Positions 6,300 through 34,517 of a stretch of DNA of 64,000 nucleotides are shown piece after piece; position 1 is the stretch's first letter, and every line of letters starts with the position of its first letter. The stretch spans positions 21,018,001 to 21,082,000 of the forward strand of contig NC_087255.1 in the NCBI RefSeq assembly GCF_037042905.1, written 5' to 3'. Position numbers and translations under genes: made by a program. Origin of the DNA: Lytechinus pictus. Taxonomy: Eukaryota. The notes beneath the pieces are model-generated. The model saw only the letters and a list, made by a program, of their open reading frames with translations. It searched no databases and was not told the origin of the DNA.

Positions 6300-6720
6300 C
6301 TTGTTTCAAAGGGGCACTCATTAAAACATAAAACGGGTCCTTCCCAGGTGAAAGGGGCACAGAACATGTTCGTTATTGGTACTTTTCTTTGGTGAAAAGG
6401 GGTACTGATACGAGAAAGGGCACCTATAAGAAGGCAAAGGGGCACTTGCTAACGGCATAAAACGGATCCTTTTCAGGTGAAATTGGCACAGAACACGTTC
6501 GAGAGGGGGCATTTTTGTATAAAAAAAGGCACTTATACGAGAAAGGGCACTTGGTAACACCTAAATCGGGTCCTCCTCAGGTGAAAGGGAAACATTACAC
6601 TTTTATGAGGGGATATTTTTTTTCTTGCATAAAAAGGGCACTTTTTCAGTACTTCAATAAGTGGGGGCACTGTGCTCCCGCCCTCCCCCCGGATCGCCGC
6701 CCCAAACAAGTGCCCCCATA
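6300..6720. repeat. Array of AAAGGGGCAC subterminal-type repeats (DNA transposon end fragment)
   Basis: About 9 copies of (A)AAGGG(G)CAC, with a roughly 120-bp higher-order period. Confidence 0.6.
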
Positions 6721-8855: not shown

Positions 8856-10236
8856 CAGTGGCGTAGCTAGGATTTTTTTCACGGGGGGGGCACTGGGGGG
8901 TCCTTGCTTTTTCAGGGGGGGCACCGGCCATTTTTCCGGTGTGTGTGTGTGTATGTGTCACAAGGGCGGATCCGACTTTCGCCATTAGGGGATGGGGCCC
9001 GAAATTATCTTCACCTGTCAGTCACTTCTTAGTTTTATTCTTATAAAACAACATAAACATGAAATAATCTCATAAGCCTTATAAAAAGTGCGAGCGCGAA
9101 GCGCGAGCGATTTTTTTTTTTTTTACTTTCATGTATTTTTTCCTGAAAATTTAATTTTCTGGGCAATGTTATGTGTGATCCTGAACAAGATTCGTATGTA
9201 ACTAGATGGTTACTGCGAACGCCAAGCGTGAACAGAAATTTTTATCAACTGTTCTAGCATTATCGAAAAGGACTGCTTAAGGACTGCTTACAGTTACCCA
9301 CGAAGACGGTATATATTTCAATAATGCGAGCGCGAAGCGCGAGCAAATTTTTTGACATTCCGACCTAAAAAATTGTCTTTCTAAGCACTTTTTGTATTAA
9401 TAAATGGAGTAGATATGTAACTAAATAATTGATGCGAGCGCGAAGCGCGAGAGGAAGAAATTTTAAAATTGAGATTTTAGACCTAAAAGCGGGACACTTT
9501 ATTCATATTTTGTAAATCATAAATAGAATATAGTCAATTGGGTATAATTAATAATGCGATTGTGAAGCGTGAGTAGACGATTATTGATATTCTGATGTGA
9601 AACTGGATAATTTAAGTACATTTTAAATAAAGAACATGCAGGCTATCGCGCATGTTTTAGATTTAGACCTAGAATCTGGGCATTCTGAATACATTTGTTT
9701 AATGGAACATTATGGAATACAATATGAACTTGGCAAATCAAACAATGTGACCGCGCAGCGTGAGCTTAAAATGCTGATATGTAGACCATAAAACGGACCG
9801 ATTTCACAGAGCACTTAAATTTGTAAATGAAAAAAAAATAATGAAAGCTCGATGTCCGAGCTAAAATATGTTTTGCATATTGACTTCAAAACTTGCTCCA
9901 TATCAGCCTATTGAGCAAGATATGAATCTCATCGAACAGGCAATTCTGGCGCGAAGCGCCAGCAAAAATTTTATATAGTAACATGAAAAGATTTGTTTTT
10001 TAATTGCAAGTCTTCCCCTCACATTATTTCATTCACTCGTCTTCCTCCTCTTATTTTCCTCTTCTTTTTTTTCTTCTGTCTTTCTTCTTCTTTTCCTTTT
10101 TCTTTTCTTCTTTCTCCCTTTTTTTTTTTTTTTTTTTTTGCTCTGCCAATTTTTTCTGGGGGGGCACCTGGGGGGGCACACCAAATCTCAGGGGGGGGCA
10201 CGTGCCCCCCCAGGCCCCCCCGTAGCTACGCCACTG
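8856..10236. mobile_element. hAT-like non-autonomous element, 8-bp TSD
   Basis: TIR CAGTGGCGTAGCTA / TAGCTACGCCACTG; TSD CCCCCTCT at 8848-8855 and 10237-10244. Confidence 0.9.
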
Positions 10237-12479: not shown

Positions 12480-12646
12480 CACTCTAAAAAAAAGTATATC
12501 AAGGAGATAAAAAGTGATATCTCCTTGAAACTTACCCTTTAAACTTGCATTTTGCCCAATATTGGGGAAAAATTACACAGCACACATGCTTGTTCCCTTT
12601 CTACCCAATAATTGTGTAAATGTTTTACTCTTCTTTTTTTAGAGTG
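12480..12646. mobile_element. CAC..GTG MITE, 2-bp TSD (TG)
   Basis: CACTCTAAAAAAA at both ends in inverted orientation. Confidence 0.75.
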
Positions 12647-15600
12647 TGATCGAGGCTGTATTCCATTTTAATGGACGTTTCCTTATTATTGTTAGAACGG
12701 AAGGAAAGAAAATAATATAGGGCCTATAGGCCTATATGTATATGCGTATACATACCAGATGAAGGAAGGATATTTAAGAGGAAATTCCATGTCGACTTCC
12801 CCGCGTCTGTCTCAATGATCCTTTCCCCCCCAAAAAAAGAAAAAAAAAATGGAAAGCAAAAAGTACAAATGTTTTTTATAATGCACCACCGTCGCAGGCC
12901 GTGGTTGGCGTGGGTGGGGGCACGCACTCGTCACAGGGGCAACTTGCCCCTCCTCCATTGTGGGTAATCCACCGCTTTATGTTCTAACTAATCGAGAAAG
13001 TGCTGTCTACTATTTTTGTAATTATGCCTACTCATGCACTGGTCCTTTTGAAATGAATGATCAAAGTAAAGAACAATTGATTTTGTTCAAGTGCATATTA
13101 ACAAAATTAATTTGTAGGAAATTAGGAGACATTTTTTCAATGTACATGAAACCTATGTGTCCTTGTATGACGATGCATTTAAAAATAAATAATTTCTTTG
13201 GGTGTGTCCTATAGGCCAACACCAATATCGAAGGCGAAATGGGCGTTTATAAACACCAAAATCAAAAGGGGGAAGGGAGCAAAATAGGGAGTTGTTTACA
13301 TCGGGTGGGGCACATTATCATACAATTCGACTCATCAGCCGCAATATATGGTCATCTTGAATTGAATAACAAGACCTTGAGATTTGTTTAGCGTGAGTAT
13401 GAGTCATCATAAAACTCCAACATCACGGAAAGGGATGCCCTCTTCGTGCTATTAATAAGCGCTGACACATCGACCACCATTATTAGTCATACCAATACAA
13501 CCAGCCGTGTATAGCTAGGCGGCACGTTGAAAACAACAACAAAATGCACAGCTCTACACACACAGTGGATGTGTGTGTGTAGTAACCTTCGGTGCGCTTG
13601 GCCAAATTTCGTCTGGAAGCATACCATTTGATTTTGTTGCCTGTATAGGCTGTATTCTGTCTGCGGGCTATGCACTATGCGTGCAATACAATACCACATT
13701 CCTTCATAAATACACAATGGATGAAGAAAAAAAAACGGCACTCTTTGACATGTAGGGGTCTATGTACAGCAGCATAGTCTGGTCGCTGACGCGGCCAGTA
13801 TAGAGTAACTGAAGTTGAAGAAAATGTATTAACACCATTAATTTGGGGCATATATTCATTACAATTTACAAACATATATATCGCAATGCAAAATAGGCCG
13901 AAAGGTGTTGGAAACTCCTTACCAATCCCTGATTTAAACCTCGGATTTATTTTGTTGGGGTTTTGTCAATTGAAAAAAAATCTGAATACTAATAAAAACC
14001 TAGCGTAAGAATGTGTAACTAGCGTATCAAAATAGAGGCCTATGTAGTCTCCAATTAAATATTTGGCCGAGTATATCAATATTCCATGTGAACATATATG
14101 AACATGAACTAAATATTCCGGGTGTTTTCCCCACTATTATAGGAGCAATGAGGTTTAACATCCTTTTCACTTCATCATAAAGGTACCATTGATCATTCGT
14201 CATTATATTTATTTTCACTTCATGACGGAGTGTCATCTGCATGCCTTCGTATATGCGTCCTGAACCATTTCATTCTGAGAAGGCCTATATTCGAATTCTC
14301 TAAGGGCCAATTTTCAGGTTAATAATTGACCAATAAAAGAAAAAGAAGAGAAGATCTCCCTAATTATATATGCACGCCAATATTCACAGGCAGTGTGTGT
14401 ACTACGGTATTTCGTCTCGAGCAAATACAGTTTGTGTGTGCCTAACGTGTCAACGTACAATGTGATAGTCTACTTTCTGCGGACATGTTGTTATCAAGTT
14501 CTTTGAGTTCGCATATAAAATCATACAGCGGGAAAATTTGATCATTTGTATAATACAGATCACAGTCTATTGATATTAGATGAATATCAATGGCAAATCT
14601 ATAAACCTATCCAATCATAAATTAATATTTATAAATGTTTGATTTGATTTTGATATAGGCCCAAAGAATATTACAATTGATACACACTCATGAATGGTTT
14701 ATGTAAGTCTGAAATAATTCAAAGAATAATATTTGTTACATGTCAAAAGTGACATGCTGCGATTTTTAAAAGAAACTATCATAAATCTTTAAAATGAACA
14801 AACATTGTAAACTTCTATAATATAGTAAGTATATAGGCAAGGCATACTGAGGCAAGGCCTAAGCCCATATCAGACGTACTGAAGTCAAATATACTTTGCA
14901 ATTTACCATAAAATTCCCGATCAATTTTTTTTAAGGCTGTTCTTTTGCAAATAATCAGTGATGTCTTCGATTGAGAAGAGCTTTCCGTTCTCTTTCGTTA
15001 ACCCCCCCCCCCTTTTTTTTTTTATTCATGCACCTCCAGAAATTTTAACACCTCCACCATAGACCTATTAGAGCATAGCTCTATGCCTCCACTAATAATA
15101 TCCCATTTGACTATTAAAAAGGGACAAAGAAAAAAATCGGGATGTAGGTCTGTAACTGGAAAATGATTAGACGAATTGTTATGACTCTTGAATTTTTTTA
15201 AAGAAATGAAATACAATTGTATTCAATTAAAAAAAAATGATTGTCAAATGATACACTAAAAATGGAATGTGTAGATAGAAGTATGTTTGCAAAGACTAGC
15301 ATATCAGTTCAAAATGAGGACCGAGTGTGCATGCGGGGAATACCACCTGTCCCTGGGGGAATTGCATTACCCTTTGAATATTCTACACTCCTAATTATTT
15401 CAAGTGTCTCCCCCCGCATATATTTATGTGCATGGCTCGTGTTCAATCTAAAACATTACCCCCACACAAAATTGGACGTGAGCAATGCATGGGGAGGGTT
15501 CAGGACTGTCGAATATGGGGTTTCGAAAGACTCCCAACCGCGGTATTATAATTGGGTCCGGGAAGGAATATTCTGCAGGGTATGCGGTGGTATAATGTGA

Positions 15601-16386
15601 ACTTGAGGATGTATGACCTCTGGCATGCCAACGTGTCAAAGGAGTTGCATTGTGCTGCGCGCGCGAACGCGTTATGAATGCAAAACGAAAGTACCATAGA
15701 TGAAATACTCGATTGTATTATATGGTGGTTAGTCGTAATAATAAATTCAAGCGAAACTGAAATTGGAAATGAAATAATTAGCTTTAGGGGTTATAGGCGC
15801 GGGACGATTTTCCTTGCTATATGAAAACAAACGAGTCCGATGTATATGGGATGACATGTTCAATTTTACGACTCCGCTGCTTTCAATAGAAATCTGCTTT
15901 TCGGTATTTCATCAAGATTATTTCTGAACTTCACACCGGTCCTTAATCATAATCATAAATCATACCACACCGGCATAAGCTTATAACCAATAGAAGAGGA
16001 ATATGCCTATATAGCATACTGCCACGTCTATATTAAATGAAAGAGAAAATATCAACCGCATCTCTGGAATTTATCTGTTTTGGGATTGGAGTCGGTTTCA
16101 AGATTTTTTTGTTACTATCAGGCTTCCGAATTGGCTGTGAATATTGATGCGAGGTCATGTCACCGGTCGTATGTTTATTTGTAACTAAATTTAAAACTCA
16201 GTCACAAGGCTTGAAAATAAATCGAATTTGTTCAGGTTCGGGTCATTCTATTCACACCAGGTGTGGATTTATTTTAAATTGCTGAAATCTATATAAAAAT
16301 TACATAATCTATATTACATAATTCTTAAAACGAGACGCAAACCAGCGTGAAGGAATTCACAAAATGTGACATAAAGAAACATAACC

Positions 16387-16417
<31 letters not shown>

Positions 16418-17057
16418 GATTATATAGGCTTATATATGTACGTGATCATTCACGTGCCTATATTTCACCTGCACCTGTACTGTACTCATTTTTACCAGGA
16501 CCCGAGGAAGGGATGACTCATCAATCAAGGGAAAACACCCTGAAAATTTTCCATGCTTCATCAGCGGATGGACTGGGGTTCCCCCGCAGCCAGACGGCTT
16601 CTACTAATGCACCGGTATTGATCCAGCCTTTTTTTTTTCACATCCCTCGGTCTTCATGCATATGGAGTGTTCAGCGCATTGCATTTTGAATTGGTCATGA
16701 ATAAAGCGTATGGGTACATTAAAGGGAATAATGGAAATTTGCTTTAAAATTTTGTGCTAAGATGACTAAAATCTTCTTGGTATTTGACTCTTATCTGGAC
16801 AGCATATAGGCCATTAATGTAGGCCTACTATTTGTGGTTAAAATACCAATAGGTCTTATATAAGTCATGTATATAGATGTTCAATATCATTAATCGGTAC
16901 ATATACATTCGACTTATAAAATGTCAACGAATGCGAAATATGTAGTTTTCATCATCACAATGAAGTACATTAAATTTCCTGAAACATAAGAAAAATACAG
17001 ACTCAAATAAAATGTTGACTTTGTGAATTATTTTGGCTTATACCATTATTATGAAAT

Positions 17058-17134
17058 ACTACTACTACTAATAATAATATAGGGTATTTATATTGCGCAC
17101 ATATCCACCTTGTTAGGTGCTCAAGGCGCTCCTA
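17058..17134 (-). mobile_element. 3' part and (TTA)n/(TAG)n tail of a tRNA-derived SINE split by the CACTA-like insertion
   Basis: Simple-repeat tail followed by sequence that continues seamlessly at 34520 (…CAAGGCGCTCC-TA-TATTACCCGGCT…). Confidence 0.8.
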
Positions 17135-18212
17135 CACTCTAAAAAAAACCTCTTCATTTTTTAATAGAATCTATTCAGATTTGAATAGAAAACCTCTTCC
17201 GAGGGACACTTACAAGGTTCTCTTCAAAATGAAGAGGAAAATCTATTCAAATAAATGAATATGTATTCTATTCAAAGTTAAATAGTTTTCCTATTCAAGA
17301 ATGAATAGAATCCTATTAAAAATGAATAGAATCAGTTTCATCCTCTTGTTAAATTGGAATATACCCTATTCAAAGTTAAATAGTATTCCTATTCAAGAAT
17401 GAGTAGTCTTTCTATTCAAGAATGAATAGAATCCTGTTCAAAATGAATAGAATCATTGTCATACACACATAAAGAAAACAGGAGAATCATCAGTGTTAGC
17501 TTTCACATATAACACATTTTATTGCAACACCAAATTCAGGAATTGGTAACATTAACAATATAAAAAACATAACAAATTATAGAAAGGTATATTACATAAG
17601 TAAAAACAAAAGAAAGTCACATATTCACTATCAAGACATGATCTATGAACATTATGTTTATTATGTAGTGTAAGACAATAATTCCTGCACAGTAGTCATG
17701 GGATGATAAGTTGAAGTTATCCAATTTTAAAAAGTTTTTTCTGTAAATGATAAAACTTCAAGCATCCCCCCCCCCCCTCAGGTTCATTTCTATATATGAC
17801 GAAAGAGCTCTGTTTGATAACACTATACCCCTCTTCTCCAAGTACGAAAACCCTACTGCCCCAGGCATGCAATGTAAGTATCAAAACACCTGTTTCTTGA
17901 CCTCGGTCCGAAGATAACACAACAGCCCGAGTGCGGTCCGGGAAAACATGTCGCCATTTTTTATTCACTTACTTTCCTTATTTCGAGGTTGATTTTCTTT
18001 GTTCGAAACTGAAAATGGGCTAGCATTGAATTTCTGAATACAATATGCCTTTGAAAACGTGATTAAATATCGAATACAATAATTTAATTCCGAAGGTCCT
18101 TCTACAGGCAGAGAAGACTTACGTAATAGCACAGCTGTTGTTATCATTTCGTCCTTGGCTCAACGCTCATAATCTGGCCTGTGGGGATTACCTGGCCAAG
18201 CGGGGTGATCAG

Positions 18213-18349
18213 GCGGGTGTTTCATAAAGCTGTTCGTAAGTTAAGAGCGACTGGTGATCATGTCTTGCGGTAAATGGTACAATTGGCGATGATCACCAGT
18301 CGTTGTTAAAGTCGCTCTTAACTTACGAACAGCTTTATGAAACGACCCC
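18213..18349. mobile_element. Palindromic Harbinger-like MITE, CAG TSD (half copy at about 28755-28816)
   Basis: Long TIR GTTTCATAAAGCTGTTCGTAAGTTAAGAGCGACT; CAG at 18210-12 and 18350-52. Confidence 0.85.
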
Positions 18350-18657
18350 CAGGGCTTGGAAATGATGTTTTAGATTTTCAAACGCAAAATGGGGTGAAAT
18401 ACCGCAGTTTGCAATCCGAACTGCGGTCCGTTCCCAAACGGGGGTAAGACGTAATTGGCAATAGACATCCTGATAGCATACATGTAAGAACATGCAGCTC
18501 AGATTTTTAAAATTGAACACCATGTTGACCAATGCCTTTAAGCCATTGTAAAGCTTTCTCATAGTAAGAATTGTTTCCACAAAAATAGGGTTTGCAATTC
18601 TCGAGCTACATCTGGTATACAAAGCATTCACAGCTCTAGGTTAACATCTCCTTTTAA

Positions 18658-19252
18658 AGGGCAAGTCGACCCCAACAAAAAGTTCATTTGAATCAAAAGA
18701 AAAAAAATTAAACAAGCATAACGCTGAAAATTTCATCAAAATCAGATTTGAAATAAAAAAGTTATGAAATTTTAAAGTTTGCTTAATTTCACAAAACAGT
18801 TATATGCACATCCTGGTCAGCATGGACCGATGACGTCACCCACTCACTATTTCTTTTGTATTTTATTATATGAAATATAGAATATTTTCAAATTTTGTAG
18901 TTTTGTCAATAAGGGAGCTCTTTGTTTAATTGCAGTATGTTGCAGAAGTGGATTCCCCACATGTAGGAAGGAGTCAAGCCCTTTTAAAACTTGTAATATA
19001 GAAAAAAATTACGATATTTCATATTTCATATAATAAAAATACAAAAGAAATAGCGAGTGGATGACCACATCAGTTCCCTCATTTGCATACTGACCAGGAT
19101 GTGCATATAACTGTTTTGTGAAATTATGCGAAACTTTAAAATGTCATAACTTTCTTATTTTAAATCCAATGTTGATGAAATTTTCAGCGTTATGCTGGTT
19201 TGATATTTCTCTTTTTATTCAAATCATCTTTTTGTTGTGGTGGACTTGCCCT
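18658..19252. mobile_element. Kolobok-like MITE, TTAA TSD (copy 1)
   Basis: TTAA|AGGGCAAGTC...GACTTGCCCT|TTAA; long imperfect TIRs; homologous to 37582-38158 and 45705-46297. Confidence 0.85.
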
Positions 19253-21401
19253 TTAAGGACAAAGGAATAGGTTGTATAAAGTTACATGCTTGAGATTAGC
19301 TAAAACCAGATTTTGCATTTTTTAAATGTTAAAATGATAAATTTTAATGTTAAAATTTTAAAATTTTTTAAATGTTAAAATGTTAAAAGTTTGAGATATT
19401 TTTTTCTGAGGCGGCGACAAAATCGAACGGTTTCTCTGGTTTGAGTCCTGATTTACTGGCATTCAACAGCTGCATTTTTAAAAGTGTCTTTAAATTTAGA
19501 ATTTATGGTTTCTCTTTGGTGTGAGCAATACAAACTTTCAATTGCCATCCTGAGAAATTTGTAATCTACTTCTCATGAAGAACCCATCCAGGGTTGTTTG
19601 ATTTAAATCATGTCGATTTAAATCATGATTTAAATCATGTGAGTTTTTCAAAAAAAATCACTGATTTGGCCTGAATATGAATATCAATGTCATTTTTAGG
19701 TTTTCAGATAATTTGCTTTAAGATGCATATCTCATTTTTCTAAAAAAAAAGAGGTGATATTTTGAGACAGCGCATAAAACATGCTAAATTTTTGTTTTGG
19801 TTGCCCTACCTCCTTAAAAATACAACTTGAATGACTTACCCACTTGACTTCACAAGTAGGGGTTTGGGTGCAAGAACATTATTGCACAAGAAAATTGTTG
19901 ACATTTGTGATTGATTTTCACCCTTAATTCACTGAACTTGACCAATCTGAAAAAAAAAAATCTGTATCTATACATCTGTACAACAATTTCAAGCAATATT
20001 GTGAGATTTTTAGAAAACAAAAATTTCTTTTGAACTTGCCAGTTATGAGAATGGTCCAATACTCGCTTCTTTAATACTTCCAGCCCAATTTTCAAATGAA
20101 AACAAGTTTTGTCTACTTATGCTGGTAAACAAAACTTGTTACTTTTGGTTGCATTCTTTCTTTAAATGTTGGCATTTGCACAATGTGCTTGCCTCCACAT
20201 TTCTCTCTGTTATTTCATGTTATTTACCTATTTATGATAAATACTTCTAAAGCTACAAAAACCCTAACACATATATACAACCCAGTAGGCTACGCACTTT
20301 AACCTCTTTACCTTGTTTCTATATATAGGCTGTTATTGCTGGCACTGAGGTACCGCTGTCTTTTCCCTGCCCAGTAAAAAATCCCAAACATGTTGGCACT
20401 GACAAGCATCAGTTTTTAAAAGATAAATCACATAAATGTGTTGCGAAAAGATATGCCTTCCTACACTTTTTATAATCTTATATCCGAGTAGATATTCATA
20501 CGTAGTGATATTTAACATAATACGAAGTTTGAACTTCAACACTAGTTAATAAGTTTTACGCTAATCTTCTGCAGACAGAGGTGCTGTGATACCTGTCTAC
20601 AACTGGTATGACATCATACAAAAAACAATATGTACATCTTTTCAATTTTCTTTTACCCAAGGGGCCAGGTGGAGCAACATTGTAATGTTTTCATGATGTA
20701 ATCTTTTATGATGTTATACCAGATGAGGTTGCCGTTTTTAGACAGGTATCACTGCGCTAATATGTTGGACTAGTGAAAATGTTCCAGGTGAGCGTAGTAC
20801 TTATGTAGTACTTGTTGAAGTTTAAACTTTCATCAGGCTTTTTCATTTGAGGCGTACAAGTTCGATAGCACACCTAAAATAGTCTTGAGGTGTGCGATTT
20901 TCAGCACACCTAAATTTGGTAAAATTATACACAGTTAGATACAAAATGCACACCTACAGCATACCTGAATATATTGAGAAGTAGTGTTTGTAGCACAACA
21001 TTCATTTCTCAAAAGAAAAAGCCTACTTTCATATCATTCTTCTACTTTGTTTTCTACAAGACGCGTTACTGCTGGCATTGAGGTACCTCTGCCTTTCCCC
21101 TGCCACAGTGTGTATACATTCGTTTGCAATTAAGAAATCCCAAACATTATGGCACTGAAATTAAAATTAGACAAATCAATGCACTCCTACTTTGATGTTG
21201 GTTGTAATTGCTGTCTGGTTAAGAAAGTATCAACAAATCACTAACTGTGAGTGCATGGATTTGTCTTCACAAATGATGCAAGTTATTTACCTATCAAAGA
21301 TTACCACTTCTTAAAGCTACAAAAATCAGAACACTATAGGTACATCCATTAGGCTTAAATACACCAATTCACCTAAATGTGTTGTACAAACATATGCCTC
21401 C

Positions 21402-21728
21402 CTAAACTTCTTTTACCTTGTTTTCTAGATAGGTTTTGAGAAGTGTTACTGCTGGAACTGAGGTACCTCTACCTTTCACCTGCCCAAGTTTGTAAACATT
21501 CTTCTGCAGAAAGTCCCAAACATGTTGACATTGCCAAGCATAATCCATATCAAGGATATACACTAGTTTCATGCATATATCAATTCCTTTCAGGAGACTT
21601 GTACATGGGATGGTGCTATTTTCCACAACAACAAACACTTGTTCTGGTTTGTCAATTTCACCTTGAATTAACACAAACGGTTGTGTTTGAGTCTTCTGGT
21701 CCAAGAAGCCTGGTATGTTTGTACCAAT
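21402..21728 (-). CDS. Transposon gene terminal exon G (IGTNIPGFLDQ...QPFVLIQG...GIDICMKLVYILDMDYAWQCQHVWDFLQKNVY...KVKEV*)
   Basis: catatgcag| acceptor; 109 codons to TAG; corresponds to ORF 21402..21785. Confidence 0.82.
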   Translation of the reverse strand: MGTNIPGFLDQKTQTQPFVLIQGEIDKPEQVFVVVENSTIPCTSLLKGIDICMKLVYILDMDYAWQCQHVWDFLQKNVYKLGQVKGRGTSVPAVTLLKTYLENKVKEV

Positions 21729-22075
21729 CTGCATATGAAATACAAATAAAATTGGTGACAAGTGAGATAGCAGAACCATCCACAAATGAAGGAGGGAATA
21801 TTTAGTGCATCATTTCAATCTTAGTAAAACAGGCAAATGTAGTGAGGGTTGTGAAGCGGAGGGCTATACTGAATGCCAGACTAAGTTCTGATAAATGCAG
21901 GGAAATACAGCCAGCAGCTATACATGCCAATATTCGTTGAACTCAATTCTCACTGAAACATATTTTCCTCCAGAACAGTTTTCAAAGAAATTTTTTTAAA
22001 AATTAATTTCTCAGGTTTTTTAGTAATCACTACGGAACAGTACTATCATTTGTAATGTACGTCCATCCATTATGA

Positions 22076-22313
22076 CAGGCGCGGATACGGGGGGGGGGGG
22101 GGGGCGAGCGGGGGAAAAAAGGGAGTGATAACCTTTTTTTTTTTCTTGTAAGATTTCAAAAAGGAGTAATAAAGACTTTTTTTTTTGCTTGTCAGATTTC
22201 AAAAAGGAGTGATAAGCTTTTTCTTTCTTTTTTTTTTGCTTGTCGGGTTTCAAATTATTGTCAGAAAATTTTCCCAGTTTGAACCCCCCCCAGAAATCCT
22301 GGATCCGCGCCTG
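22076..22313. mobile_element. hAT-like MITE in an intron of the transposon gene
   Basis: TIR CAGGCGCGGAT / ATCCGCGCCTG; TSD CATTATGA / CGTTATGA. Confidence 0.85.
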
Positions 22314-23242
22314 CGTTATGAGACGATATATGACAGGCAAAACAATTAATTCTATCTTTTATTCTCATTCTCAGTCACAAATTTGAGTAATTTTCAAACC
22401 AAAGATGATGTCAACACCCCCCCCCAAAAAAAAAAAACATTTTTATTTAAAAATGTACACCCCTATTCAAACATACAATATTCCAAACCAAGTAGAGCAG
22501 TTCGCGTTTAGTTATAATGTGTAGCTTCACTGTGTTGACCGCTAAATGCACTGTCATATATTGTCTCATAATGGATAGCTTCATATTCCTATAGGATTAC
22601 AAACGCACTCATTTACTAGGAATAATAATTAAGGCTGATTTACAGAGCAAAACCTTTTCAAACATTGACAGGTTGACACCAGCCTTAAAACTGATTATTT
22701 TTTCTGTGAAGATTCAAAATAAACACGTCTGTTTGCAGATTTTTCTGACGGATCCACGTTTTCAAATGTCAAATTTTGGGGGTTAAAAAAGACGAAAATT
22801 CACCCACACACACACACTATGCGTCTCAGACGTGTAAATACCCTTGCTGCCACAATTGCTTAGTTTTTGTGTCATATAGCTGATTTAACTGACTCAAACT
22901 TATAGAGCACTATAGCGGGCTTGTCAAATTATTTAAATTTTACTATAAAAAATTCCATCCAGAAAGGAGTTTACTGCAGTTTCTTTCACAAAATGTCATA
23001 TTTTTGTCTAGGCTTTCATGGAGTCATAGGAGTGCCCCAGATATACTGTAGGAGAGCCGTTTTCTACTTTTTGCCCAGGTGCTACAACCCTTTGCAATGA
23101 GCCACTGTGTGTTTTATGTAATATCACTAAAATAATCTCAGTCCTGTCCTTTTAATAGCAGGCTCTGGGTATTTGTTTAATTTCTGCTTGATCTGTCTGA
23201 AACAGTGTGTGCCAAATAGTAAAAATAAAATTTGTTCCTCAC

Positions 23243-23377
23243 CTCTTTGCGCTGCACGAATGCCTTGCGGGCTTCATCCATCGTTGAAGAACCACTTCTC
23301 CCTTTTGCCCCTTTCTAGCTTTCCCGGTGGAAACAGCATAGGCAACACCTGCAGAGATAAGTTTACCTCCTGTTCAT
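23243..23377 (-). CDS. Transposon gene exon F (DEQEVNLSLQVLPMLFPPGKLERGKR / frameshift / SGSSTMDEARKAFVQRKE)
   Basis: gtttcag| ... GAG|gtgagg; 135 bp. One extra base near AAAAGGGAGAAG (about 23296-23312) leads to an in-frame TGA, and removing it restores phase 0 with exon G. Confidence 0.65.
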
Positions 23378-24864
23378 CTGAAACATAGGAGACAAGATAC
23401 AACTACATTTGTAAGTTTCTAAATTATAGTTCTTCCAAATGTTTATTTTCTCTCAAACTCACATCAAAGTCACATCTGTACAAGAACAATTTATGCCGCA
23501 GCATAGCAAGAGTAAATTGCTCATCAACCAGTTATGGGAGCGTGTTGTGAATCAAACAAGTGCATATGAAAGCGCGTACAGACGCCGCAAACGTGACATG
23601 ATAGCAACGGCAAAAACACCTGCAGAGAAGTAAACTCCAGGACAGACTAAGATTAATTTGTGCTCATTTTATCACATCTAACCTGAGATTAAAGTTAAGT
23701 ACAGATGTGCAGCCCGAACACCCAAAATTTCCAACAACCACCCTTTGATGAGTAAACCTAAGAAGATGCAAATTTGCAACCCATGTGTTAACCATTTACT
23801 TTTGTTGCTTTTGGAAGGGGCCTTTTTAAAACTAATCAGTGTTTTTTAATACCAAGTAAATTGGAATGCAAATAAGTACTTTTTGACAATATATCGGTAA
23901 ACCAAAGAAAAATTCCTCAAAAATTAATATGTACACCAATTTTTAAAAAAGGGGCCATAGGTAAACAAGAGAGGCCAAAAAGGACCCTATTCGGGCCACA
24001 CATCCCCGTACCCACCCTTTTACTAAGACCCCCTTCCCAGCATCAAACACGGGCTTTGTCCTCCATTCATATCACACAATTTCAAATTGGAGATAAAGAG
24101 GTGGTTATCAAATACGACTCAACACCAGTGAATGAGACTATAATATCATTGGTTATATTATAGTCTTAGGTGGGTGAGAATGATGTTGGCAGAGGTCAAA
24201 TTAGAGTTATCTTGAAATAGCAAATTTTTTACAAAAATTTTCATCCTTCAATACTAAAATCACTGTACATGTCAGTAGCATAAATTTAAGATCCCAATAT
24301 TGGCGTAGAGATGATAAAAATCGATCTGCATGTCAAATTTTGATGAAAATGACTTTAAAAAAGATTTTGTTGTTGCTAATTAATTCAGATTTTGTTCTGA
24401 CAAACTTTTGCATTTCAATTTGCAAATATTATGTCCTACATGTACAATGAACTTACTGAACCTTGCAACTTACATGAACATGATCTGTAATCTTGTATTG
24501 AAAGCAATTAATGTATTTATGCTCTCCTGAACATTTCACTTTTTTGTTGAGATATAAGGCTTTTATCATCTCAGCAATGATATGATGAAGGAAGCAAGTT
24601 TTCGTACGACAAAGTAAATGAATTAATAATAATATTCATATTTAAAAGAAACAAATACTTTTCCAGACATATTTGTAGTTTATTACTATTACTGCAAATT
24701 GTAAAAAATGTTGGTATAGTTCACATCGCTCTAATTAATTAACATTAACATTAATCCCACTTACTGAAATGGGACAATCATAGTCTGGATTATCAGGTTT
24801 TCACCAAGCTATTATAATACATACATGTAGAATGGATTTCAAATTGCATATTCACTACTGTAGG

Positions 24865-25008
24865 CAGGGCCTTAGTTAGAATTTTGGAGTTGCCCCTCAT
24901 TTTTGAAAGAGTGCCTGTCCAAAATGGGCTGAATTTGTATAAAATGTTCATTACTTGCCCGTCAAAAAGGGAAGTTACCTGTCAAAGTGACGGGCATGGC
25001 ATGGCCTG
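24865..25008. mobile_element. hAT-like MITE, 8-bp TSD
   Basis: ACTGTAGG duplicated at 24857-64 and 25009-16; CAGG..CCTG ends. Confidence 0.75.
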
Positions 25009-25059
25009 ACTGTAGGTTTGAAAGAAGAGTGAAGCTGTTAGACATAAGCACCATTTTAC

Positions 25060-25207
25060 CTGTTTCAACAGCACCTTTGAAGTTAAGGTATAGCCTCCAA
25101 TCCACCTGCTTTTCAGCATAGTTCAGGACATGTCTGCAAAATTTCGGCCATGTGAGGAATAACTTATCTGCTGATTGTGGGAAAAGAATTCGGAAATCCT
25201 GGTCAAC
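25060..25207 (-). CDS. Transposon gene exon E (VDQDFRILFPQSADKLFLTWPKFCRHVLNYAEKQVDWRLYLNFKGAVET)
   Basis: ttatacag| ... CAG|gtaaaa; 148 bp, phase 0 to 1. Confidence 0.8.
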
Positions 25208-25683
25208 CTGTATAAAGACAAAGTTAAAATCGAATAGTTTTATGTTTTGTCATTAGTATAAAGAAAACCTGTTTTGTACATTCTATTTGCTCTATTAAAG
25301 TGGAAACTACAAGAATTACATATACATAAAATTGAATAATTTACTAAGCTGACTGGTCAAAAAATGGCTCTGCAAAAAATTTGAACGCAGGGAGCTAAAA
25401 AGTGTATAAGTTGTGAACTGTGAGAGCTGTGATATTTTGCCACCCTATGTAGACACCCCTATTTTTTTCACATCACATTACAGAACTGTGCCATCGTCTT
25501 AGAAATGCAAGCTGGCCTGAAGGAAAAACCTGAAAATGTGAATGAATCTGGGCTTTTAAAAGCCTTCAAAACGGGCTGAAATTAGATAAAAGTGCAAGAT
25601 CAAGCTGGAAATCATAAATTAAAAAAGCAGGAATTACTGCAAAAGCAGGAAGACTTTACTAGTCAGTACCATTGAAAACTTAC

Positions 25684-25868
25684 CATTCCTTCTGTGTCAA
25701 TTAAACGTGGAAACAACAGTAAAAGCTCTTGCACAGGTTTGTCCTTATTGTCTCTAATGTAGCCTGCCCTCGCCTTACAGGTATCCCTCATCCATGATCG
25801 AACTTGTTGCCTTGGCTCTTTGTGGTCCTGAAGCCACTTTATTTTTGCATCTACTTCCTCATCTCTAT
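25684..25868 (-). CDS. Transposon gene exon D (DRDEEVDAKIKWLQDHKEPRQQVRSWMRDTCKARAGYI...LLLFPRLIDTEGM)
   Basis: atttag| ... ATG|gtaagt; 185 bp, phase 1 to 0. Confidence 0.8.
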
Positions 25869-26753
25869 CTAAATATGCAAATAAATTCAGGGAGTTAATG
25901 CATTATGCCTTTTTAGTTTATTTATAAGTCATGACAGTCACAAGCAAATGTTCCATTTCACCTGATGACAGTAAAAAATTAACACAAGAAATAAAACATG
26001 TGGGCAGGCTGTGACAATTGGTTGCCTGATTGCCCTGGGCAATCATTTTTTGGTTTGGGCAACAATGATTAATATCAAATCGTAAGTTAGCTTGCATCAA
26101 TGTTATCACTTAAGTTACACACATCCAAAAATTATACATGTCTTAAATAGTTACAAACCATAAACATATTCTGACTTTTAACTTTGCACAGACCGTTTTG
26201 TTATGCGGCTTGTTAGCAAGGTCAAGCAGTTTTAAGGCCAAGCTTGCCTGACCAGGCAATCAAGTGAAGAAAAAATCGTCGCAGCCTGCATGATGCACGC
26301 TCAACCCCCAGGCTCATACACTGTAATGTGCATGGTGCTGAATAGATGAAGCATGTGAAGCCTTAAAGCACTAGGAGTTTATTTGTTAAGATGTCAAGAA
26401 TTAACCACTTCCCTGAATATTTCTTGACTGATTTCACTATTTTGTACAAACAAAAAGGGTACAGAAAAAAAGGAAGGAACTTGTGGCGCAGATCTCCAAA
26501 ATATCATTCAGATCGATACGAAAAATTGCCTCATTTTCGTTACAGCGCAACTAATTTGTATATTCAGATGTCGCTTGAATGTGTCAGCATGATTGCTTAA
26601 ACCCACTTTTTAAAAGACACTATACACATGCATGGGTATTATTTGAGACTAATTCTGTGTATGCTTCCCTGGCAGACACAAATACCCCTATTAGATCTCC
26701 ATGACCAATTAACTAAGGTTATGTAATGTTCAGTTGTTATATTTCTTCCTTAC

Positions 26754-26922
26754 CTGACGACAGATCCAGGTCTTCTGTATTAGGCAAGTTTGCTTGCACT
26801 TTCTTGTTGCTTTCTTTTGGCGTTCTGGCAGGATCACGATATCTGACGTTCCTTAGCCGCATTTCAATGTAACCTGATGAATCTTTTGTTTTGTTTTGGC
26901 TTGCTGGAGTGAACCAGGTCAA
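26754..26922 (-). CDS. Transposon gene exon C (LTWFTPASQ...SSGYIEMRLRNVRYRD...DLSS)
   Basis: tttaaag| ... CAG|gtaagg; 169 bp, phase 0 to 1. Confidence 0.8.
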
Positions 26923-27349
26923 CTTTAAAGTAAAAGAGTAAAAAAAGTAAAACAAAACTATTGAATTTTAGAAGTAGAGATCACTGTTCATAAGAATTTG
27001 TATTACCCTTTGGGGTAACTGTACGGTCAATCAGATTTACCTTAATAAAGGCTTGCCCAATCTGAGACAATAACGTACTTTCAATGATTTAAGCATTTAG
27101 ACTTTCAGTTGTATCAAGTTTCATCCACTTTTGTCTGGTTGAGTAAATAATAACCTGCTGCAGATAACGTGTTCAGGGGGTCATTTAGCATTAGCTGATA
27201 TTAAGTATAAACAATGGTTATCTTGGTCATCATGAGCCTAAAGTCAATGATGAACATGGCTTGTAAATGGGTGATCCTATCTTTAACAAGTAACAATGTT
27301 ACACACAATTTATCTAGCCATGAACTAACATAATGAACTCAAAACTTAC

Positions 27350-27434
27350 GTAAGCATCATGATCATCATTGTCCAACGCAGGAAACTGGGTAACAATGCA
27401 TTTTGCCATTGCCAATTTTTGCTCTGTTTTAGGC
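27350..27434 (-). CDS. Transposon gene exon B (WPKTEQKLAMAKCIVTQFPALDNDDHDAY)
   Basis: ctaaag| ... TAC|gtaagt; 85 bp, phase 2 to 0. Confidence 0.78.
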
Positions 27435-28299
27435 CTTTAGAAAAATGAAAATTGAATGTTTAAGAATATTGTTTTAAAAGGCTATATATATTAGAGATTA
27501 AATGCAATTCTTTGCAGGGAATAAATTACCTAGTATCGCATCGCAATTTGCTTTGCTTTTTTGCAGGGCTGCTACACAAAATTTACTTTGTGTCACAATT
27601 TTTTTTCCATGGGATTGTACATAATTTGTTTTAAATATTTTCCCATCTCCAAAAATTTCTAATCAAATCTGGGAAGCAAAATTATTCCCTGCTTTGAATT
27701 GTAGTCTGATGAATTTCTGCTTCATTGGTGATCTGCTTTGAGAATATCCTTTATATAGCAAAATTTTGATCCACCCATTTTCTGATTTTAGTAATTCCAA
27801 ACTCCCATCCTTTAATAAAGCAGACAAACAGTGCAAGGTGTATGTATCACACCAAACTATTTCCAAGCACCTGCATAATACACATGTAATGTCAGCTCAT
27901 TGCATGTATTTGTTATGTAAATGTGATAAACAATTCAAAAGCTGTGTTTAAATATCAACACACAAGTTTCAATTATGCCATGAAAATGTAAAAAAATATA
28001 AATTTATGTGAAATTTGTTAGATAAGATTACATGTATACAATTTTTATACCAAGTGTCTGGTTATTTCTGGTATGCAATGCACCAGTTAAGTTGATAATT
28101 AACTTTTGTGTCATCTACAAGAGAAAGGGATTGCTTTTGAAATGGTATGTATGTGTCTGTGGTCAAACTTTTAATCCTTGACATCTATTTGATCACTGGA
28201 GTCAATTGGTAAGGCAAATAAGCAAATAAACTACCACATAGTATAGCACATCTAAATACGCTAGCATTTCCTTTTTCTGCTCATAGGATTTTAGCTTAC

Positions 28300-28439
28300 C
28301 ACTTTGTATATGTCTCTATCAGGTGTGAGACCAATGTGTTCACTATCAATTTTCGTGAATTGTAGCTGATGCACCCTTCCTCCATCTCCTTTATAAGCTC
28401 CTCCCCCTCTCTCCGTTTGGACAAGATGGCTCGTATGTC
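28300..28439 (-). CDS. Transposon gene exon A (DIRAILSKRREGEELIKEMEEGCISYNSRKLIVNTLVSHLIETYTK)
   Basis: ctgcag| ... TG|gtaagc; 140 bp, phase 0 to 2. Confidence 0.75.
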
Positions 28440-31400
28440 CTGCAGATCAGAAGTGATTACAAAGAAAGGTCATAAGTGGATGCTTTAAGTGATCCATGTA
28501 TGTGCCGGGGCCTTCACATCTAGAATATGAGAGAGATACTATAGGAACAGGAACAAACAAGGAGCCTAGCTAGTACATTTTTTTTCTTCATTTTGCGCCA
28601 ACAATCGTTAAATGTGGTACCATCATCCAAATCGATAGTTTCTGGGATTGTTTTCATACCTTTTTTTTAAATTAATTTCATATTTTTCTAAAAAACAGCC
28701 AACATGTTCTTAGGTCATAATTCAATTACATAGGGATATCACAGAGCACAAGAAAGGATCACCAGTCGTTCGTAAAGTCATTCGTATCTTACGAACAGCT
28801 TTATGAAACACCCACCAGGTGACTTCAAACTTTTTGATCATCAAAATGTCATTTTAATACTCCTTGGGTATAAATTTTTCTAAAATTTAACTCTTGGGCG
28901 ATTATGAGACACATTTCTTTTTTATTTAAATTTTTTCCCCTCAAATAGAGCTCAAACTAAATTTCTATCTGATTTAATTTGACATGATAGACTAGAGCTG
29001 AATTAAGAAGCACTCATACAGGAATGTTAATTATTTGTCTCTGGAGACATAAGAACATTTATAAGATGGAAACTATCCCCTCTAATTTCATAATTTTTTC
29101 GATTTTGAGAAAACCATTAGAGTGGTGGGTTTGTATGTTGCTGCTGTTTCTACAACATAAAAAATCAATAGGTGTGGGTAAAAAATACAGTTGTCTATAA
29201 GGCAAGGGCAATAATGGAACTTGTAAACATAAAACTGGCAACGAGTTCTCAAGCTTTAAAATGGGCCAAAAATTAGTTTAAAAAAATCAGTTCTTTGAGC
29301 CCCTATTTTGGTGCCTTTCCATTCTTTAAGCCCCTATTTTCAGCCCTGCGAATCTCACACCCATACCAAAACAAAAGTTTAGTACCCCTCCCCCCCCCCC
29401 CCCCGATCGATATTTGCTCTTGGAACCAAATTATGTCTCACATATATGAAATTCTTGTAGGCCTACATGGCATTATAAGCTTAGTGTTCAAAAATAAAAA
29501 TTCCAGGGGAATTCGTCCCCTCCCCCCCCCCCCCCCCTTAGTACTGCCACTGCTGAAAAATGTCTCTGGAGTGGCTTCTGACATGACTTGCCGCGATAAA
29601 TTGCTCTGACTTAACCCATTTTAGATGTGCCACTGAGCGAAATCATGCACGCTCGCTTTAAAAGACAATATCTGATCTGATTTTGTAGGCACACAATATT
29701 TCATTTCCAGTAATTTTTCAACAAACCCCCCCCCAAAAAAAAAAAAACACATTTTAAGGCCAAGTAAAACAAAAAAAAATGGTTCTCTTCTGGTTTTTGG
29801 AAAAATAGGAGGGGCTCTTTGTTTTTTATTGAATTAATTTCTGAATACCTACGGTTTATAGCACTATATTTTCAATATGCGGTGCCCCCCAAAAAGATGG
29901 AGGCCTTTTTATTTTCTTGTTTCAAACATCTTTATAAAACAAGTTATATGGCCTTGGGAATTAAAGTTCCGGGGAGGGGAGGTAGTAGACTTGCATCTTT
30001 TTGAAATCACACAGGGCTTTATTTTTGTTCATTATCAGATCACTTATATAATATTCTGAGAAAATAAAAAAGTCCTGAATACAAAGTCTGTTGCAATTAG
30101 AATTTGTTGAAATACATGTAAATATATGCAAATGTCTCTAATTTCCCCCCTCGATCGGATTTGTTCTTTTTTACTAGCCCTGACAATATACATATCGGTC
30201 ATATCAGACCAGCAAACTAAGCTAATTGCCTGACAGTGACTTTTACTGGTAAGGCCAAGTAAAATCAATTCCTAGTTTCTCGTCCGGATTTTTCGAAAAT
30301 GAGGAGGGGGTTCCATGTTATTTATTTGATATTTGATTTTTTTTAATACACAAAAATGCTATTGGGTCAACTTCAACACATTCTTCACAAATTTAGTAAC
30401 ACTTGTACTACACTACAGAGGATCGAAACAAGGTGTAATTGCATATTAATGTTTTTTGGTATATCATTGTCTAGAAGTCCTCATATTTTTATTCATATCA
30501 TTTCAGAACAAAAATATCAAATAACAAAGCAATTAAGGCGGCCCCAAAAAAAGGAAGGAGGGGACGAGAAAAAAAATTGAAATTATTTTTATTTGGCCTC
30601 ATCTGACCACCTGACAGGTGTGTGTCAAGCCCTTTTTTTGGGGGGGTGGTCTACATATGTGACCTACTATCTCAAAAGCCCACAATAAGTCACCTAAAAT
30701 GAGTTTTGAAATTTTCATTGTTGAAATTCCATTATTTTAATTATATTATTCTAGAATTTACAAGACGGCTGTGCCCTTAGCCTTTAGGTGTTGACATGCG
30801 TAGTCAGTCACAACTATGTCAACAGAGAGTTTCCTTTATGATAAAAATATTGAGGCCTAATCTTAAAGATCCATAATGCTTAGAAAATGTTTCGAATCGG
30901 CTACTCTTAAAATGTGGGATAATTCATCAAAGCACATAGTAATAAAGTACTAAAATCTACAAGAAAGGCCAACTGAGAAACTCTGATTTCTGAAACGAAT
31001 TGAAATAAAATCACAGGTTTCTGGTAGGCTTTGAGTTTCCCCCTCCTGCGCTAAGCGTGGAAGCTTTGAAATTTCCTGAAATCATTAGCAAAAGAAGACA
31101 ATCTTTGTTGTGATTCTACATCTGCCCTTTCCCTAACTTCTCTTACTTTTTCATTTTTTTTTCTCTCTCCCCCTTTCTCCCTCTCTCCTTTTTTTGTTTT
31201 TTTTTTGGGGGGTGACTGCCCCAACCCCCCCAGCTACATGCCTGGTAGTTATGACACTGATGGCTAGTTTTATCTCAATGTCAATCTTGACACTTTGCCA
31301 AAGACTCTCTTTGCATGCATATAATATAGGCCTAGGCCTACATAAAAAAACTAGAAATATCACTATCAGTGATTAATAATACTACCCCCGCCAGCAGCGC

Positions 31401-31569: not shown

Positions 31570-32442
31570 CTATTAGGCCTATATCTTGCACTTCTTCATA
31601 TCACTATGGACCCATGCACCGAATTTCAAATCAATTGGTCAAAAAATGAGGGAGTAGTATGATCCACAAGATTTTTGCACCAATTTTATTTTAAAATGTT
31701 GTTGCCATGGCAACGCAATTCTCGACTTTGACGAAAATTATATCTTGCACTTATATTTTATACACATCAATATGGACTTAATGTTCCAAATTTCAAATTA
31801 ATTGGTCCTTAACTGAGGGAGTAGTATGATCCACAAAAATTTTGCACAAATTTCATTCAAAAAATGCTGTTGCCATGGCAACACGATTCTCGACTCTGAC
31901 GAAAAATATATCTTGAATTTTTATACATCATTATGGACCTATGTAAGCCTACTAGCCTAATTAAAAATTCAGGTCAATTGATCAAAAACTGAGGAAGGAG
32001 TTAGATCCACAAATTTTTTGCATGAATTTCATTCAAAAAATGCTGTTGCCACGCGGCAACGCAATTCTCAACTTTGATGAACAATATATCTTGCACTTCT
32101 ATACATCATTATGGACCTATGTAGGCCTACTAAATTTCAGGTCAATTGATCAAAAACTGAGGGAGGAGTTAGATCCACAAGATTTTTGCATGAATTTCAC
32201 TCAAAAAATGCTGTTGCCATGGCAACGCATTTCCCGACTTTGACGAAAAATATATCTTGCACTTCTACATATCATTATGGACCCATGTATTAAATTTCAA
32301 GTCAATTGATCAAAAACTGAGGGAGTTTGATCCACAAGATTCTGCAACGGACCGCCCGCCCGCCCGGCCACACGGTGATTCCTATATAGGGCCTAGGCCT
32401 ACCCCCTTACAGTTACACACCTTGTGTGTGGCGGGGGTATAA
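31570..32442 (+). mobile_element. Helentron/HINE(DINE-1)-like element with a roughly 170-bp tandem array (about 4.5 units)
   Basis: Units recur at 168/176/168 bp spacing, followed by (CCGC)n, GGTGATTCCTATATA and a terminal hairpin TACCCCC..ACACAC..GTGTGT..GGGGGTATAA. The classification rests on recalled HINE end architecture. Confidence 0.7.
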
Positions 32443-34182: not shown

Positions 34183-34517
34183 CATTTTGTCATTCAAAAG
34201 GGAACGATTCTCTATTTTCATTAAATAGTCTTCTATTCAAAATATTTGACAAGGAAATCTTTTTGTTATTGTCATTCAAAATGAAACGATTCTTTTCATT
34301 TTAAATAGTTTTCTAATCATTTTGAACAGTTTTCTATTCAAAATATTTGACAAGGAAATCTTTTTATCTTTGTCATTCAAAATGAAACGATTCTTTTTCA
34401 TTTTGAACAGTTTTCTAATCATTTTGAATAGAAAACTATTCATTTTGAATAGTTTTCTATTCGAAAATATTTGACAAGGAAATCTTTTCAGAATTTGAAG
34501 AGGTTATTTTAAGAGTG

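What the first reader, a model, noticed from the sequence alone, without database searches (positions are those of the whole stretch)
21402..28439. Hidden 7-exon transposon-borne gene of unknown function (about 395 codons)
Seen: seven exons with canonical splice sites, five of them absent from the ORF track. Their phases chain correctly (0-2-0-1-0-1-[shift]-0) into one protein with motifs SRKLIVNTLVSHLIE, LAMAKCIVTQFPAL, SGYIEMRLRNVR, LLLFPRL..GMVDQDFRILFP, QPFVL and DMDYAWQCQHVWDFLQKNVY. Nested MITEs fall only in introns, which hints at past selection. Inference from memory: it belongs to the uncharacterised EnSpm-accessory/SAMD3-like family and could be the factor that binds the subterminal repeats.
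Basis: partly seen in the sequence, partly recalled or inferred. Interest (0 to 1): 0.8.

Follow-up and report, generated by a model that had tools for sequence, protein, structure and literature searches.

The report
Expressed SAMD3-like gene in transposase-less transposon
The seven exons are real and are spliced exactly as predicted in RNA; they are the second, non-transposase gene of an echinoderm CACTA-type DNA transposon, related to the uncharacterised body of human SAMD3, sitting here in a copy that has lost its transposase.

Summary
Seven minus-strand exons (21402-28439) have GT-AG borders and chain in phase. An assembled RNA contig joins exons 2 to 7 at exactly those borders.

The frameshift in exon 6 is present in the window. 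It is absent from that RNA contig and from a second, independent contig, where 'AG' at 23317-23318 reads 'T' and the frame stays open.

The model is incomplete at its 5' end. Exon 1 starts at an acceptor, and the RNA contig carries 543 more bases upstream that I could not place.

The gene lies inside a 17.4-kb element with CACTCT...AGAGTG ends, a TA duplication and end-restricted repeats. Four sea-cucumber elements with the same termini and 2-bp duplications carry a SAM exon, a CACTA-type transposase and this same seven-exon module in the same order. The window copy shows neither transposase nor SAM domain.

Human and mouse SAMD3 are the only significant structural matches. There is no Pfam family and no solved fold.

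Binding of the subterminal repeats remains untested. The evidence for it is weak and mixed.

The scan has already met this family on other DNA of this genome. What is new here is an expressed, apparently constrained, transposase-less copy.

The parts
28300..28439 (-). Exon 1 of the model (DIRAIL...ETYTK). It begins at an AG acceptor, so it is not the first exon of the transcript.
   Evidence: Homologue matches. The RNA contig has 683 nt 5' of E2. The 551 nt directly upstream are not held by runs X1-X4.
27350..27434 (-). Exon 2
   Evidence: The joint 27350|26922 is in the X1 RNA contig.
26754..26922 (-). Exon 3. It holds the conserved basic helix GYIEMRLRNVRYR.
   Evidence: Joints 26922|27350 and 26754|25868.
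25684..25868 (-). Exon 4
   Evidence: Joints. The only substitution here in the X5 contig (25771) is synonymous.
25060..25207 (-). Exon 5
   Evidence: Joints.
23243..23377 (-). Exon 6. In the window it carries a frameshift. At 23317-23318 (+ strand 'AG') two independent contigs read 'T', and the frame is then open.
21402..21728 (-). Exon 7 with the stop codon. It encodes most of the conserved C-terminal alpha/beta domain (QPFVL, DICMK, HVWDF).
19608..21401 (-). Approximate 3' UTR, inferred from the length of the RNA contig. It contains two decayed copies of the 3' end of exon 7 at 21037-21157 and 20300-20431.
   Evidence: D9; the record runs to 3525, and 21510-21541 is matched a second time at record 2724-2755.
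17135..17155 (+). Terminal inverted repeat at the 3' side of the gene, CACTCTAAAAAAAACCTCTTC. It is preceded by the TA target duplication.
34497..34517 (-). Terminal inverted repeat at the 5' side of the gene. It matches the other arm at 19 of 21 positions and is followed by TA.
17156..17470 (.). Subterminal repeats with motif TTCTATTCA(AA), in both orientations.
   Evidence: (D6). There are 10 copies in the two 450-bp ends and none in the 16.5-kb interior.
34190..34496 (.). Subterminal repeats of the other end, with the same motif.
   Evidence: (D4, D7, I7).
22076..22571 (.). Two small inverted-repeat insertions (22076-22313 and 22316-22571) in intron 6.
27505..27701 (.). Small inverted-repeat insertion in intron 1.

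Best explanation
This is the non-catalytic second gene (the 'SAMD3-like module') of an echinoderm CACTA/EnSpm-type cut-and-paste transposon. It is preserved in a 17.4-kb internally rearranged copy in which no transposase and no SAM exon can be detected.

Shown:
- The exon structure.
- Splicing in RNA.
- The open frame in two independent contigs.
- Retention of the family's invariant residues.
- The element's termini.
- The same gene sitting beside, or around, a transposase in four sea-cucumber elements.

Inferred mechanism, about 0.35: the protein is the functional analogue of maize TnpA. It would be a partner of the transposase that helps to recognise or pair the element's ends, using a helical N-terminal part with a conserved basic helix. 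The C-terminal domain of unknown fold would handle protein contacts. Lacking its own transposase, this copy could act only in trans on autonomous relatives, as helper or as inhibitor.
For: - Gene model and splice sites.
- Five of six junctions lie in one RNA contig whose exons are otherwise identical to the window.
- 646 homologous clusters were found for exon 7 alone.
- The model aligns colinearly with full-length relatives.
- All 5 invariant and 11 of 12 near-invariant family residues are kept.
- Against an independent 4.2-kb contig, 33 of 35 substitutions and all but one indel are intronic. Both exonic substitutions seen (25771 and 21471) are synonymous. The exonic deficit has binomial p 0.046 for substitutions and 0.011 for all events.
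- TIRs, TA duplication and end-restricted repeats.
- Sea-cucumber elements L001 to L004 are 15.0 to 18.1 kb, have termini CACTCT(T)AAAA and 2-bp duplications CA, TA, TG and TA. Each has a transposase followed by the same seven exons with matching intron positions. In L003 the transposase lies inside an intron of the SAM-module gene.
- The transposase resembles Plavaka/Transposase_21.
- SAMD3 is the sole significant structural match.
- For DNA binding: residues 70-160 of the model repeatedly superpose on DNA-bound homeodomain-like three-helix domains. Animal CACTA elements are known to make a short spliced non-transposase product that was proposed as a TnpA analogue (PMC1636069).
Against: - The window itself has a frameshift in exon 6. 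If that is a true allele, constraint is not absolute.
- No start codon or 5' exon was found.
- No SAM domain was detected.
- Two deep RNA-seq runs sampled at about 6% show no exon reads, so expression is restricted.
- For the mechanism: the homeodomain-like matches have Z of only 4.2-5.4, within the tool's stated noise. The candidate recognition helix is almost invariant across families and phyla, whereas the subterminal motifs differ between elements: TTCTATTCA, TCCTGGTTA, GTTGGGTAA, TTGGTCAAA. That pattern argues against this helix reading those motifs.
- The selection statistics rest on one pair of haplotypes.
Confidence: 0.8

Rival explanations
1. This is a gene being tamed by the host. 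Freed of its transposase, the copy is kept because the protein now serves the sea urchin, the route by which vertebrate SAMD3 may have arisen.
For: - It is transcribed and correctly spliced at moderate depth in four samples of one study.
- Differences are depleted in exons, and the exonic ones are all synonymous.
- The invariant residues are kept.
- There is no transposase in the element.
- Related SAM-plus-module genes are annotated with isoforms in echinoderms and fishes.
Against: - The termini and subterminal repeats are still well preserved (19 of 21 TIR positions), so the insertion need not be old.
- The reference carries a frameshift.
- No orthologue in another species was examined.
- Purifying selection is equally expected for a transposon gene that still serves its family.
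Confidence: 0.2
2. This is a decaying relic. The copy is a dead deletion derivative whose transcription and splicing merely persist because promoter and splice sites have not yet eroded, and the protein does nothing.
For: - There is a frameshift in the window.
- The SAM exon and the transposase were not detected.
- Introns are littered with small insertions.
- The 3' end of exon 7 is duplicated and decayed in the UTR.
- There are no reads in two RNA-seq runs.
Against: - Two independent contigs have the open frame.
- There are no nonsynonymous differences between haplotypes.
- All invariant residues are retained despite only 40% identity to the nearest relatives.
Confidence: 0.2
3. This is a captured host gene. 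A non-autonomous CACTA element picked up a cellular gene, as Pack-type elements do.
For: The element has no transposase, and the gene has ordinary introns.
Against: In four autonomous sea-cucumber elements the same gene sits at the same place and in the same orientation relative to the transposase, with the same intron positions. In one of them the gene contains the transposase in an intron. Predicted fusion proteins joining transposase and module exist.
Confidence: 0.03

Closest known systems
Maize En/Spm (CACTA) with TnpA and TnpD
   Same: - Termini begin with CACT.
- Subterminal repeats lie in both orientations and are restricted to the ends.
- There are two element-encoded proteins.
- In the relative L003, the transposase reading frame sits inside an intron of the other gene on the same strand.
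- Defective derivatives lacking the transposase exist.
   Different: - No sequence or Pfam similarity to plant TnpA (0 Pfam families).
- The target duplication is 2 bp rather than 3.
- The protein has a SAMD3-like body of unknown fold.
- Alternative splicing from one transcript was not tested here.
SmTRC1 and other animal CACTA ('TRC') transposons (PMC1636069)
   Same: These are animal elements with a Transposase_21-type enzyme, 2-bp duplications, and short spliced transcripts that lack the transposase domain and were proposed to act like TnpA.
   Different: SmTRC1 ends begin with CCC, not CACT. Its accessory proteins were reported to have no detectable relatives in other animals. The protein here belongs to a family of at least 646 clusters spread over echinoderms, fishes, a brachiopod and arthropods.
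Vertebrate SAMD3 (Q8N6K7, Q8C4H2)
   Same: It is the only significant structural match. It is colinear over SAMD3 residues 83-505 (E 1.4e-9), and over residues 400-518 for the C-terminal domain (TM 0.54). Relatives such as P0070, P0151 and P0163 have the same SAM-plus-body layout.
   Different: - Sequence identity is only about 15%.
- Whole-chain TM is 0.39.
- No sequence-profile test against true SAMD3 could be run.
- The window copy shows no SAM domain.
- SAMD3 is a single host gene, not transposon-borne.

Membership tests
CACTA/EnSpm (CMC) DNA transposon | Terminal inverted repeats beginning CAC(T) | tested here: met
   CACTCTAAAAAAAACCTCTTC at 17135 and its inverse ending at 34517 agree at 19 of 21 positions. 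The same CACTCT(T)AAAA tip is found in L001 to L004.
CACTA/EnSpm (CMC) DNA transposon | Short (2-3 bp) target-site duplication | tested here: met
   TA lies on both sides in the window. The duplications are CA, TA, TG and TA in L001 to L004. No empty site was available to confirm this.
CACTA/EnSpm (CMC) DNA transposon | Subterminal repeats confined to the ends | tested here: met
   TTCTATTCA occurs 10 times in the two 450-bp ends and 0 times in the 16.5-kb interior. Each sea-cucumber element has a different motif.
CACTA/EnSpm (CMC) DNA transposon | Transposase of the Transposase_21/Plavaka type | tested here: not met
   No transposase remnant was detected in the window, so this is a non-autonomous copy. 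In relatives the neighbouring ORF hits Transposase_21 at only 19.2 bits against a cut-off of 28.6. Its nearest named feature-space clusters carry Plavaka (best score 0.92) or Transposase_21 (best score 0.86).
SAMD3-like proteins | Colinear similarity to the SAMD3 body outside the SAM domain | tested here: met
   Tested on a modelled homologue (P0009, 40% identical to the window protein). SAMD3 of man and mouse are the only hits with probability 1.00. An Atlas cluster named SAMD3-like lies among the neighbours. A sequence-profile test against SAMD3 itself was not possible.
SAMD3-like proteins | N-terminal SAM domain | tested here: not met
   No SAM-like exon was found on the minus strand between 28440 and 34517. 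The 5' exons of the transcript remain unplaced, so this could still change.
Plant TnpA (Pfam Transposase_24) | Sequence similarity to TnpA | tested here: not met
   No Pfam family was found at E up to 10 on the exons, or up to 0.01 on the body of ten full-length relatives.

The most novel reading that the evidence does not exclude
A transposase-less, SAM-less copy of the transposon's accessory gene is kept intact and expressed. It either acts in trans as a regulator of the autonomous family, perhaps as an inhibitor that competes with the full-length SAM-bearing protein, or has been taken over by the host. Either way it would be a living intermediate on the path that produced vertebrate SAMD3.
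Probability: 0.25. Interest if true: 0.65.

Novelty: new variant of a known kind. Interest (0 to 1): 0.5.

Why it matters
Two-gene CACTA transposons are textbook in plants. The second protein of the animal elements is hardly described, and I found no paper in the searchable library that links SAMD3 to transposons.

This locus shows that the SAMD3-like gene can outlive its transposase as a spliced, expressed and apparently constrained gene. That gives a concrete handle on what the protein does, and on how a human gene of unknown function, used as a marker of NK and cytotoxic T cells, may have originated.

It also matters for annotation. Many 'uncharacterized LOC' and 'SAMD3-like' genes of echinoderms and fishes are probably transposon genes.

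Tried and rejected
- Pfam on each exon and on ten full-length relatives found nothing for the module.
- Foldseek and VIA-align against the PDB gave nothing significant, for the whole model or for the C-terminal domain alone. The best Z was 5.5 and 3.6 respectively.
- A search for transposase remnants in the window found none.
- A search for SAM or other N-terminal exons upstream of E1 gave only chance-level matches. A tempting small ORF at 28577-28657 (MKTIPETIDL...KKKN) is not supported, because runs X1-X4 do not hold the 551 nt upstream of E1.
- Raw RNA-seq runs X8 and X9 gave no exon reads at about 6% sampling.
- I tried to confirm the empty site from another copy of the flanking SINE. The only other copy, at 1520-1629, does not span the junction.
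- A profile search to pull in true SAMD3 orthologues returned only close relatives.
- The duplicated 3' end of exon 7 is not a conserved feature of the sea-cucumber elements.
- P0031 could not be located on a contig.
- Two literature searches for SAMD3 together with transposons returned nothing relevant.
Full report
**1. The observation**

Reading the minus strand, I fixed seven exons by their splice signals and frames:
- E1 28439-28300
- E2 27434-27350
- E3 26922-26754
- E4 25868-25684
- E5 25207-25060
- E6 23377-23243
- E7 21728-21402

Exon 6 changes frame near 23315. Frame 0 runs into TGA at 23276, while the following 24 codons, which lead in phase into exon 7, are in frame +1. Read through with X at the break, the model has 396 residues.

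Exon 1 starts at a good acceptor (ttctgatctgcag|GAC) and has no start codon, so the model is truncated at its 5' end.

**2. The exons are real**

Exon 7 alone finds 646 protein clusters at E <= 0.001 among 1.84 billion representatives. Many are 350-470-aa proteins matched at their C-terminus. Those proteins hit all seven exons in tblastn, and the model aligns colinearly with them from the 'FDV..IL' motif to the last residue.

The window protein is a divergent member, 40% identical to the nearest full-length relatives. Even so, it keeps all five invariant and 11 of 12 near-invariant positions of a 37-sequence alignment.

**3. RNA evidence**

Four runs of one study (X1-X4) hold 15-16% of the sampled words of the 7-kb span, which is about the exon fraction of 17%. 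Laid on 21435-27434, run X1 gives one contig of 3525 nt (depth 27.6) made of exons 2 to 7. Its joints fall exactly at my borders, and all are CT..AC on the + strand.

The exons in that contig are identical to the window except at one place. The + strand 'AG' at 23317-23318 is 'T', one base fewer. On the coding strand this reads ...FPPGKKKGAKGRSG..., which leaves the frame open and resembles relatives such as P0004 (LFPPRKKK).

An unspliced 4.9-kb contig of another study (X5) is 98.7% identical and has the same shorter form. A second X5 contig carries the E6-E7 joint. So the frameshift is private to the assembly. It is either an error or a null allele.

The X1 contig extends 683 nt 5' of E2, which is 140 nt of E1 plus 543 more, and about 1.8 kb 3' of the stop. 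The 551 nt directly upstream of E1 are not held by X1-X4, so the acceptor at 28439 is probably used and the 5' exon(s) lie further upstream. I could not find them.

Two deep RNA-seq runs sampled at about 6% show no exon reads, so expression is not ubiquitous.

**4. Signs of constraint**

Between the window and the X5 haplotype:
- 33 of the 35 listed substitutions over 23243-27434 are intronic, although exons make up 17% of that stretch. All but one indel are intronic too.
- The binomial p is 0.046 for substitutions and 0.011 for all events.
- The single exonic substitution away from the frameshift site (25771) is GCG>GCA, which is synonymous.
- The one substitution seen in exon 7 (21471) is GGT>GGA by my reading, also synonymous.

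This is one pair of haplotypes, so the result is suggestive only.

It is weak evidence, because three insertions would miss the exons by chance more often than not.

**5. The surroundings**

The gene lies in a 17,383-bp element. The left tip is CACTCTAAAAAAAACCTCTTC at 17135. Its inverse ends at 34517, agreeing at 19 of 21 positions. TA flanks both sides.

The motif TTCTATTCA occurs ten times, in both orientations, in the two 450-bp ends and never in the interior. The right flank carries a repeat with another partial copy at 1520-1629.

No transposase remnant is detectable in the window.

**6. The same gene in autonomous elements**

| Locus | Product | Termini (locus coordinates) | Length | Duplication |
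|---|---|---|---|---|
| L001 | P0010, 1216 aa | 9616 to 25247 | 15.6 kb | CA |
| L002 | P0050 | 7482 to 23066 | 15.6 kb | TA |
| L003 | P0163, SAM + module | 4252 to 22392 | 18.1 kb | TG |
| L004 | P0159, the nearest full-length relative of the window protein | 5023 to 20046 | 15.0 kb | TA |

- **L001.** P0010 is a predicted fusion of a SAM domain, a transposase (weak Transposase_21 hit) and the module. The transposase is one long open stretch at 13238-15868. The module follows in seven exons whose borders fall at the same residues as in the window. The element has perfect 18-bp termini, CACTCTAAAAACATCCTG.
- **L002.** It is built alike.
- **L003.** The transposase reading frame (8952-11322) lies between the SAM exon (8656-8778) and the next exon (11708) of the SAM-plus-module gene. 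That places it inside an intron, on the same strand.
- **L004.** A SAM fragment, an 835-aa transposase and the module follow one another. The whole element sits in an intron of a wnt gene.

By protein-language features, the transposase part is nearest to Plavaka and Transposase_21 clusters. Both belong to the CACTA/EnSpm group by established knowledge.

The 11-bp tip is thus shared between sea cucumber and this genome, while the subterminal motif differs in every element.

These results make capture of a host gene very unlikely. They identify the window element as a derivative in which neither the SAM exon nor the transposase can be detected.

**7. What the protein is**

There is no Pfam family. 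An AlphaFold model of P0009 built from 37 relatives is confident (pLDDT 83.7, pTM 0.80). It has:
- a disordered N-terminus;
- a helical part (residues 50-310) interrupted by a disordered acidic linker;
- an alpha/beta C-terminal domain (310-445).

Against Swiss-Prot models, only human and mouse SAMD3 are significant. They are colinear over SAMD3 residues 83-505 (E 1.4e-9, TM 0.39). The separately modelled C-terminal domain (pLDDT 89.5) again finds only SAMD3, residues about 400-518 (TM 0.54).

Nothing in the PDB matches. The C-terminal domain's best Z is 3.6.

Relatives occur in echinoderms, cyprinid and other fishes (si:dkey-286j15.1), a brachiopod and, by Atlas features, arthropods. Some carry SAM, CIDE-N or DUF4769 N-terminal parts.

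**8. How it may work**

By analogy with En/Spm, and with the short spliced products of the animal element SmTRC1 (PMC1636069), the likeliest role is a non-catalytic partner of the transposase.

In favour of DNA binding, residues 70-160 of the model repeatedly superpose on DNA-bound homeodomain-like domains, in about 16 of the 50 best VIA rows. This region corresponds to exons 1-3 here and ends in the basic helix GY.E.RLRNVRKR.

Against it, those scores (Z 4.2-5.4) are within the tool's stated noise. The helix is also nearly invariant across families whose subterminal motifs all differ, which is not what a motif-reading helix should do.

I put about 0.35 on end recognition or pairing. The remainder falls on protein-level regulation of the transposase or on something unrelated. 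A copy without SAM and without transposase could act only in trans.

**9. Relation to earlier notes of this scan**

The scan has met this family before on other DNA of the same genome, which those notes call Lytechinus pictus. I did not verify the species. Earlier notes describe:
- intact two-gene elements with the transposase nested in an intron of a ten-exon SAM-domain gene (s1-317490, s1-327672);
- a SAMD3-colinear accessory protein (s1-317497);
- a CIDE-N variant (s1-323337).

My own checks on sea-cucumber loci and on structure agree with them. What this locus adds is a transposase-less copy that is nevertheless transcribed, correctly spliced and apparently constrained.

**10. Verdict**

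The element is ordinary as a transposon relic. The gene is of moderate interest as a possible trans-acting or half-tamed member of the family that gave rise to SAMD3.

Noticed in passing
window 41037-41972 (-): An intronless 311-aa ORF encodes a Jun-type bZIP protein (…[35 protein letters not shown]…). It is the host gene of this window, and another note of the scan concerns its promoter.
   Followed up: no
window 21037-21157 and 20300-20431 (-): There are two decayed tandem copies of the last ~40 codons of exon 7, spaced about 380 and 700 bp downstream of the real one. They lie inside the 3' UTR and are present in the RNA contig. They are not a conserved feature of the sea-cucumber elements.
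   Followed up: partly
window 31614-32326: A tandem array of five units of about 168 bp lies inside the element, upstream of the gene. Another note of the scan comments on TAGGCCTA octamers here.
   Followed up: no
window 18654-19256: A roughly 600-bp insertion with long inverted arms (86 nt at 86%, 55 nt at 89%) lies in the 3' part of the element, downstream of the inferred end of the 3' UTR. It is probably a nested MITE.
   Followed up: no
window 18205-18353 and 28757-28823: These are copies of a short repeat with a GTTTCATAAAGCTGTTCGTAAG core. RNA contigs of a second, differently coded organism hold about 13% of the words of 28440-28990, probably this repeat. It seems to be shared between species.
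   Followed up: no
L004 (Holothuria leucospilota CM055974.1, 48.10-48.13 Mb): A complete 15-kb element with SAM exon, transposase and module lies inside the range of a wnt gene called on the opposite strand.
   Followed up: partly
P0048 and P0192: Predicted fusions join the module to a nucleoplasmin-like domain (sea cucumber, named '46 kDa FK506-binding nuclear protein') and to a Tc1/mariner transposase (fish). They are probably gene-prediction chimeras, but they were not examined.
   Followed up: no
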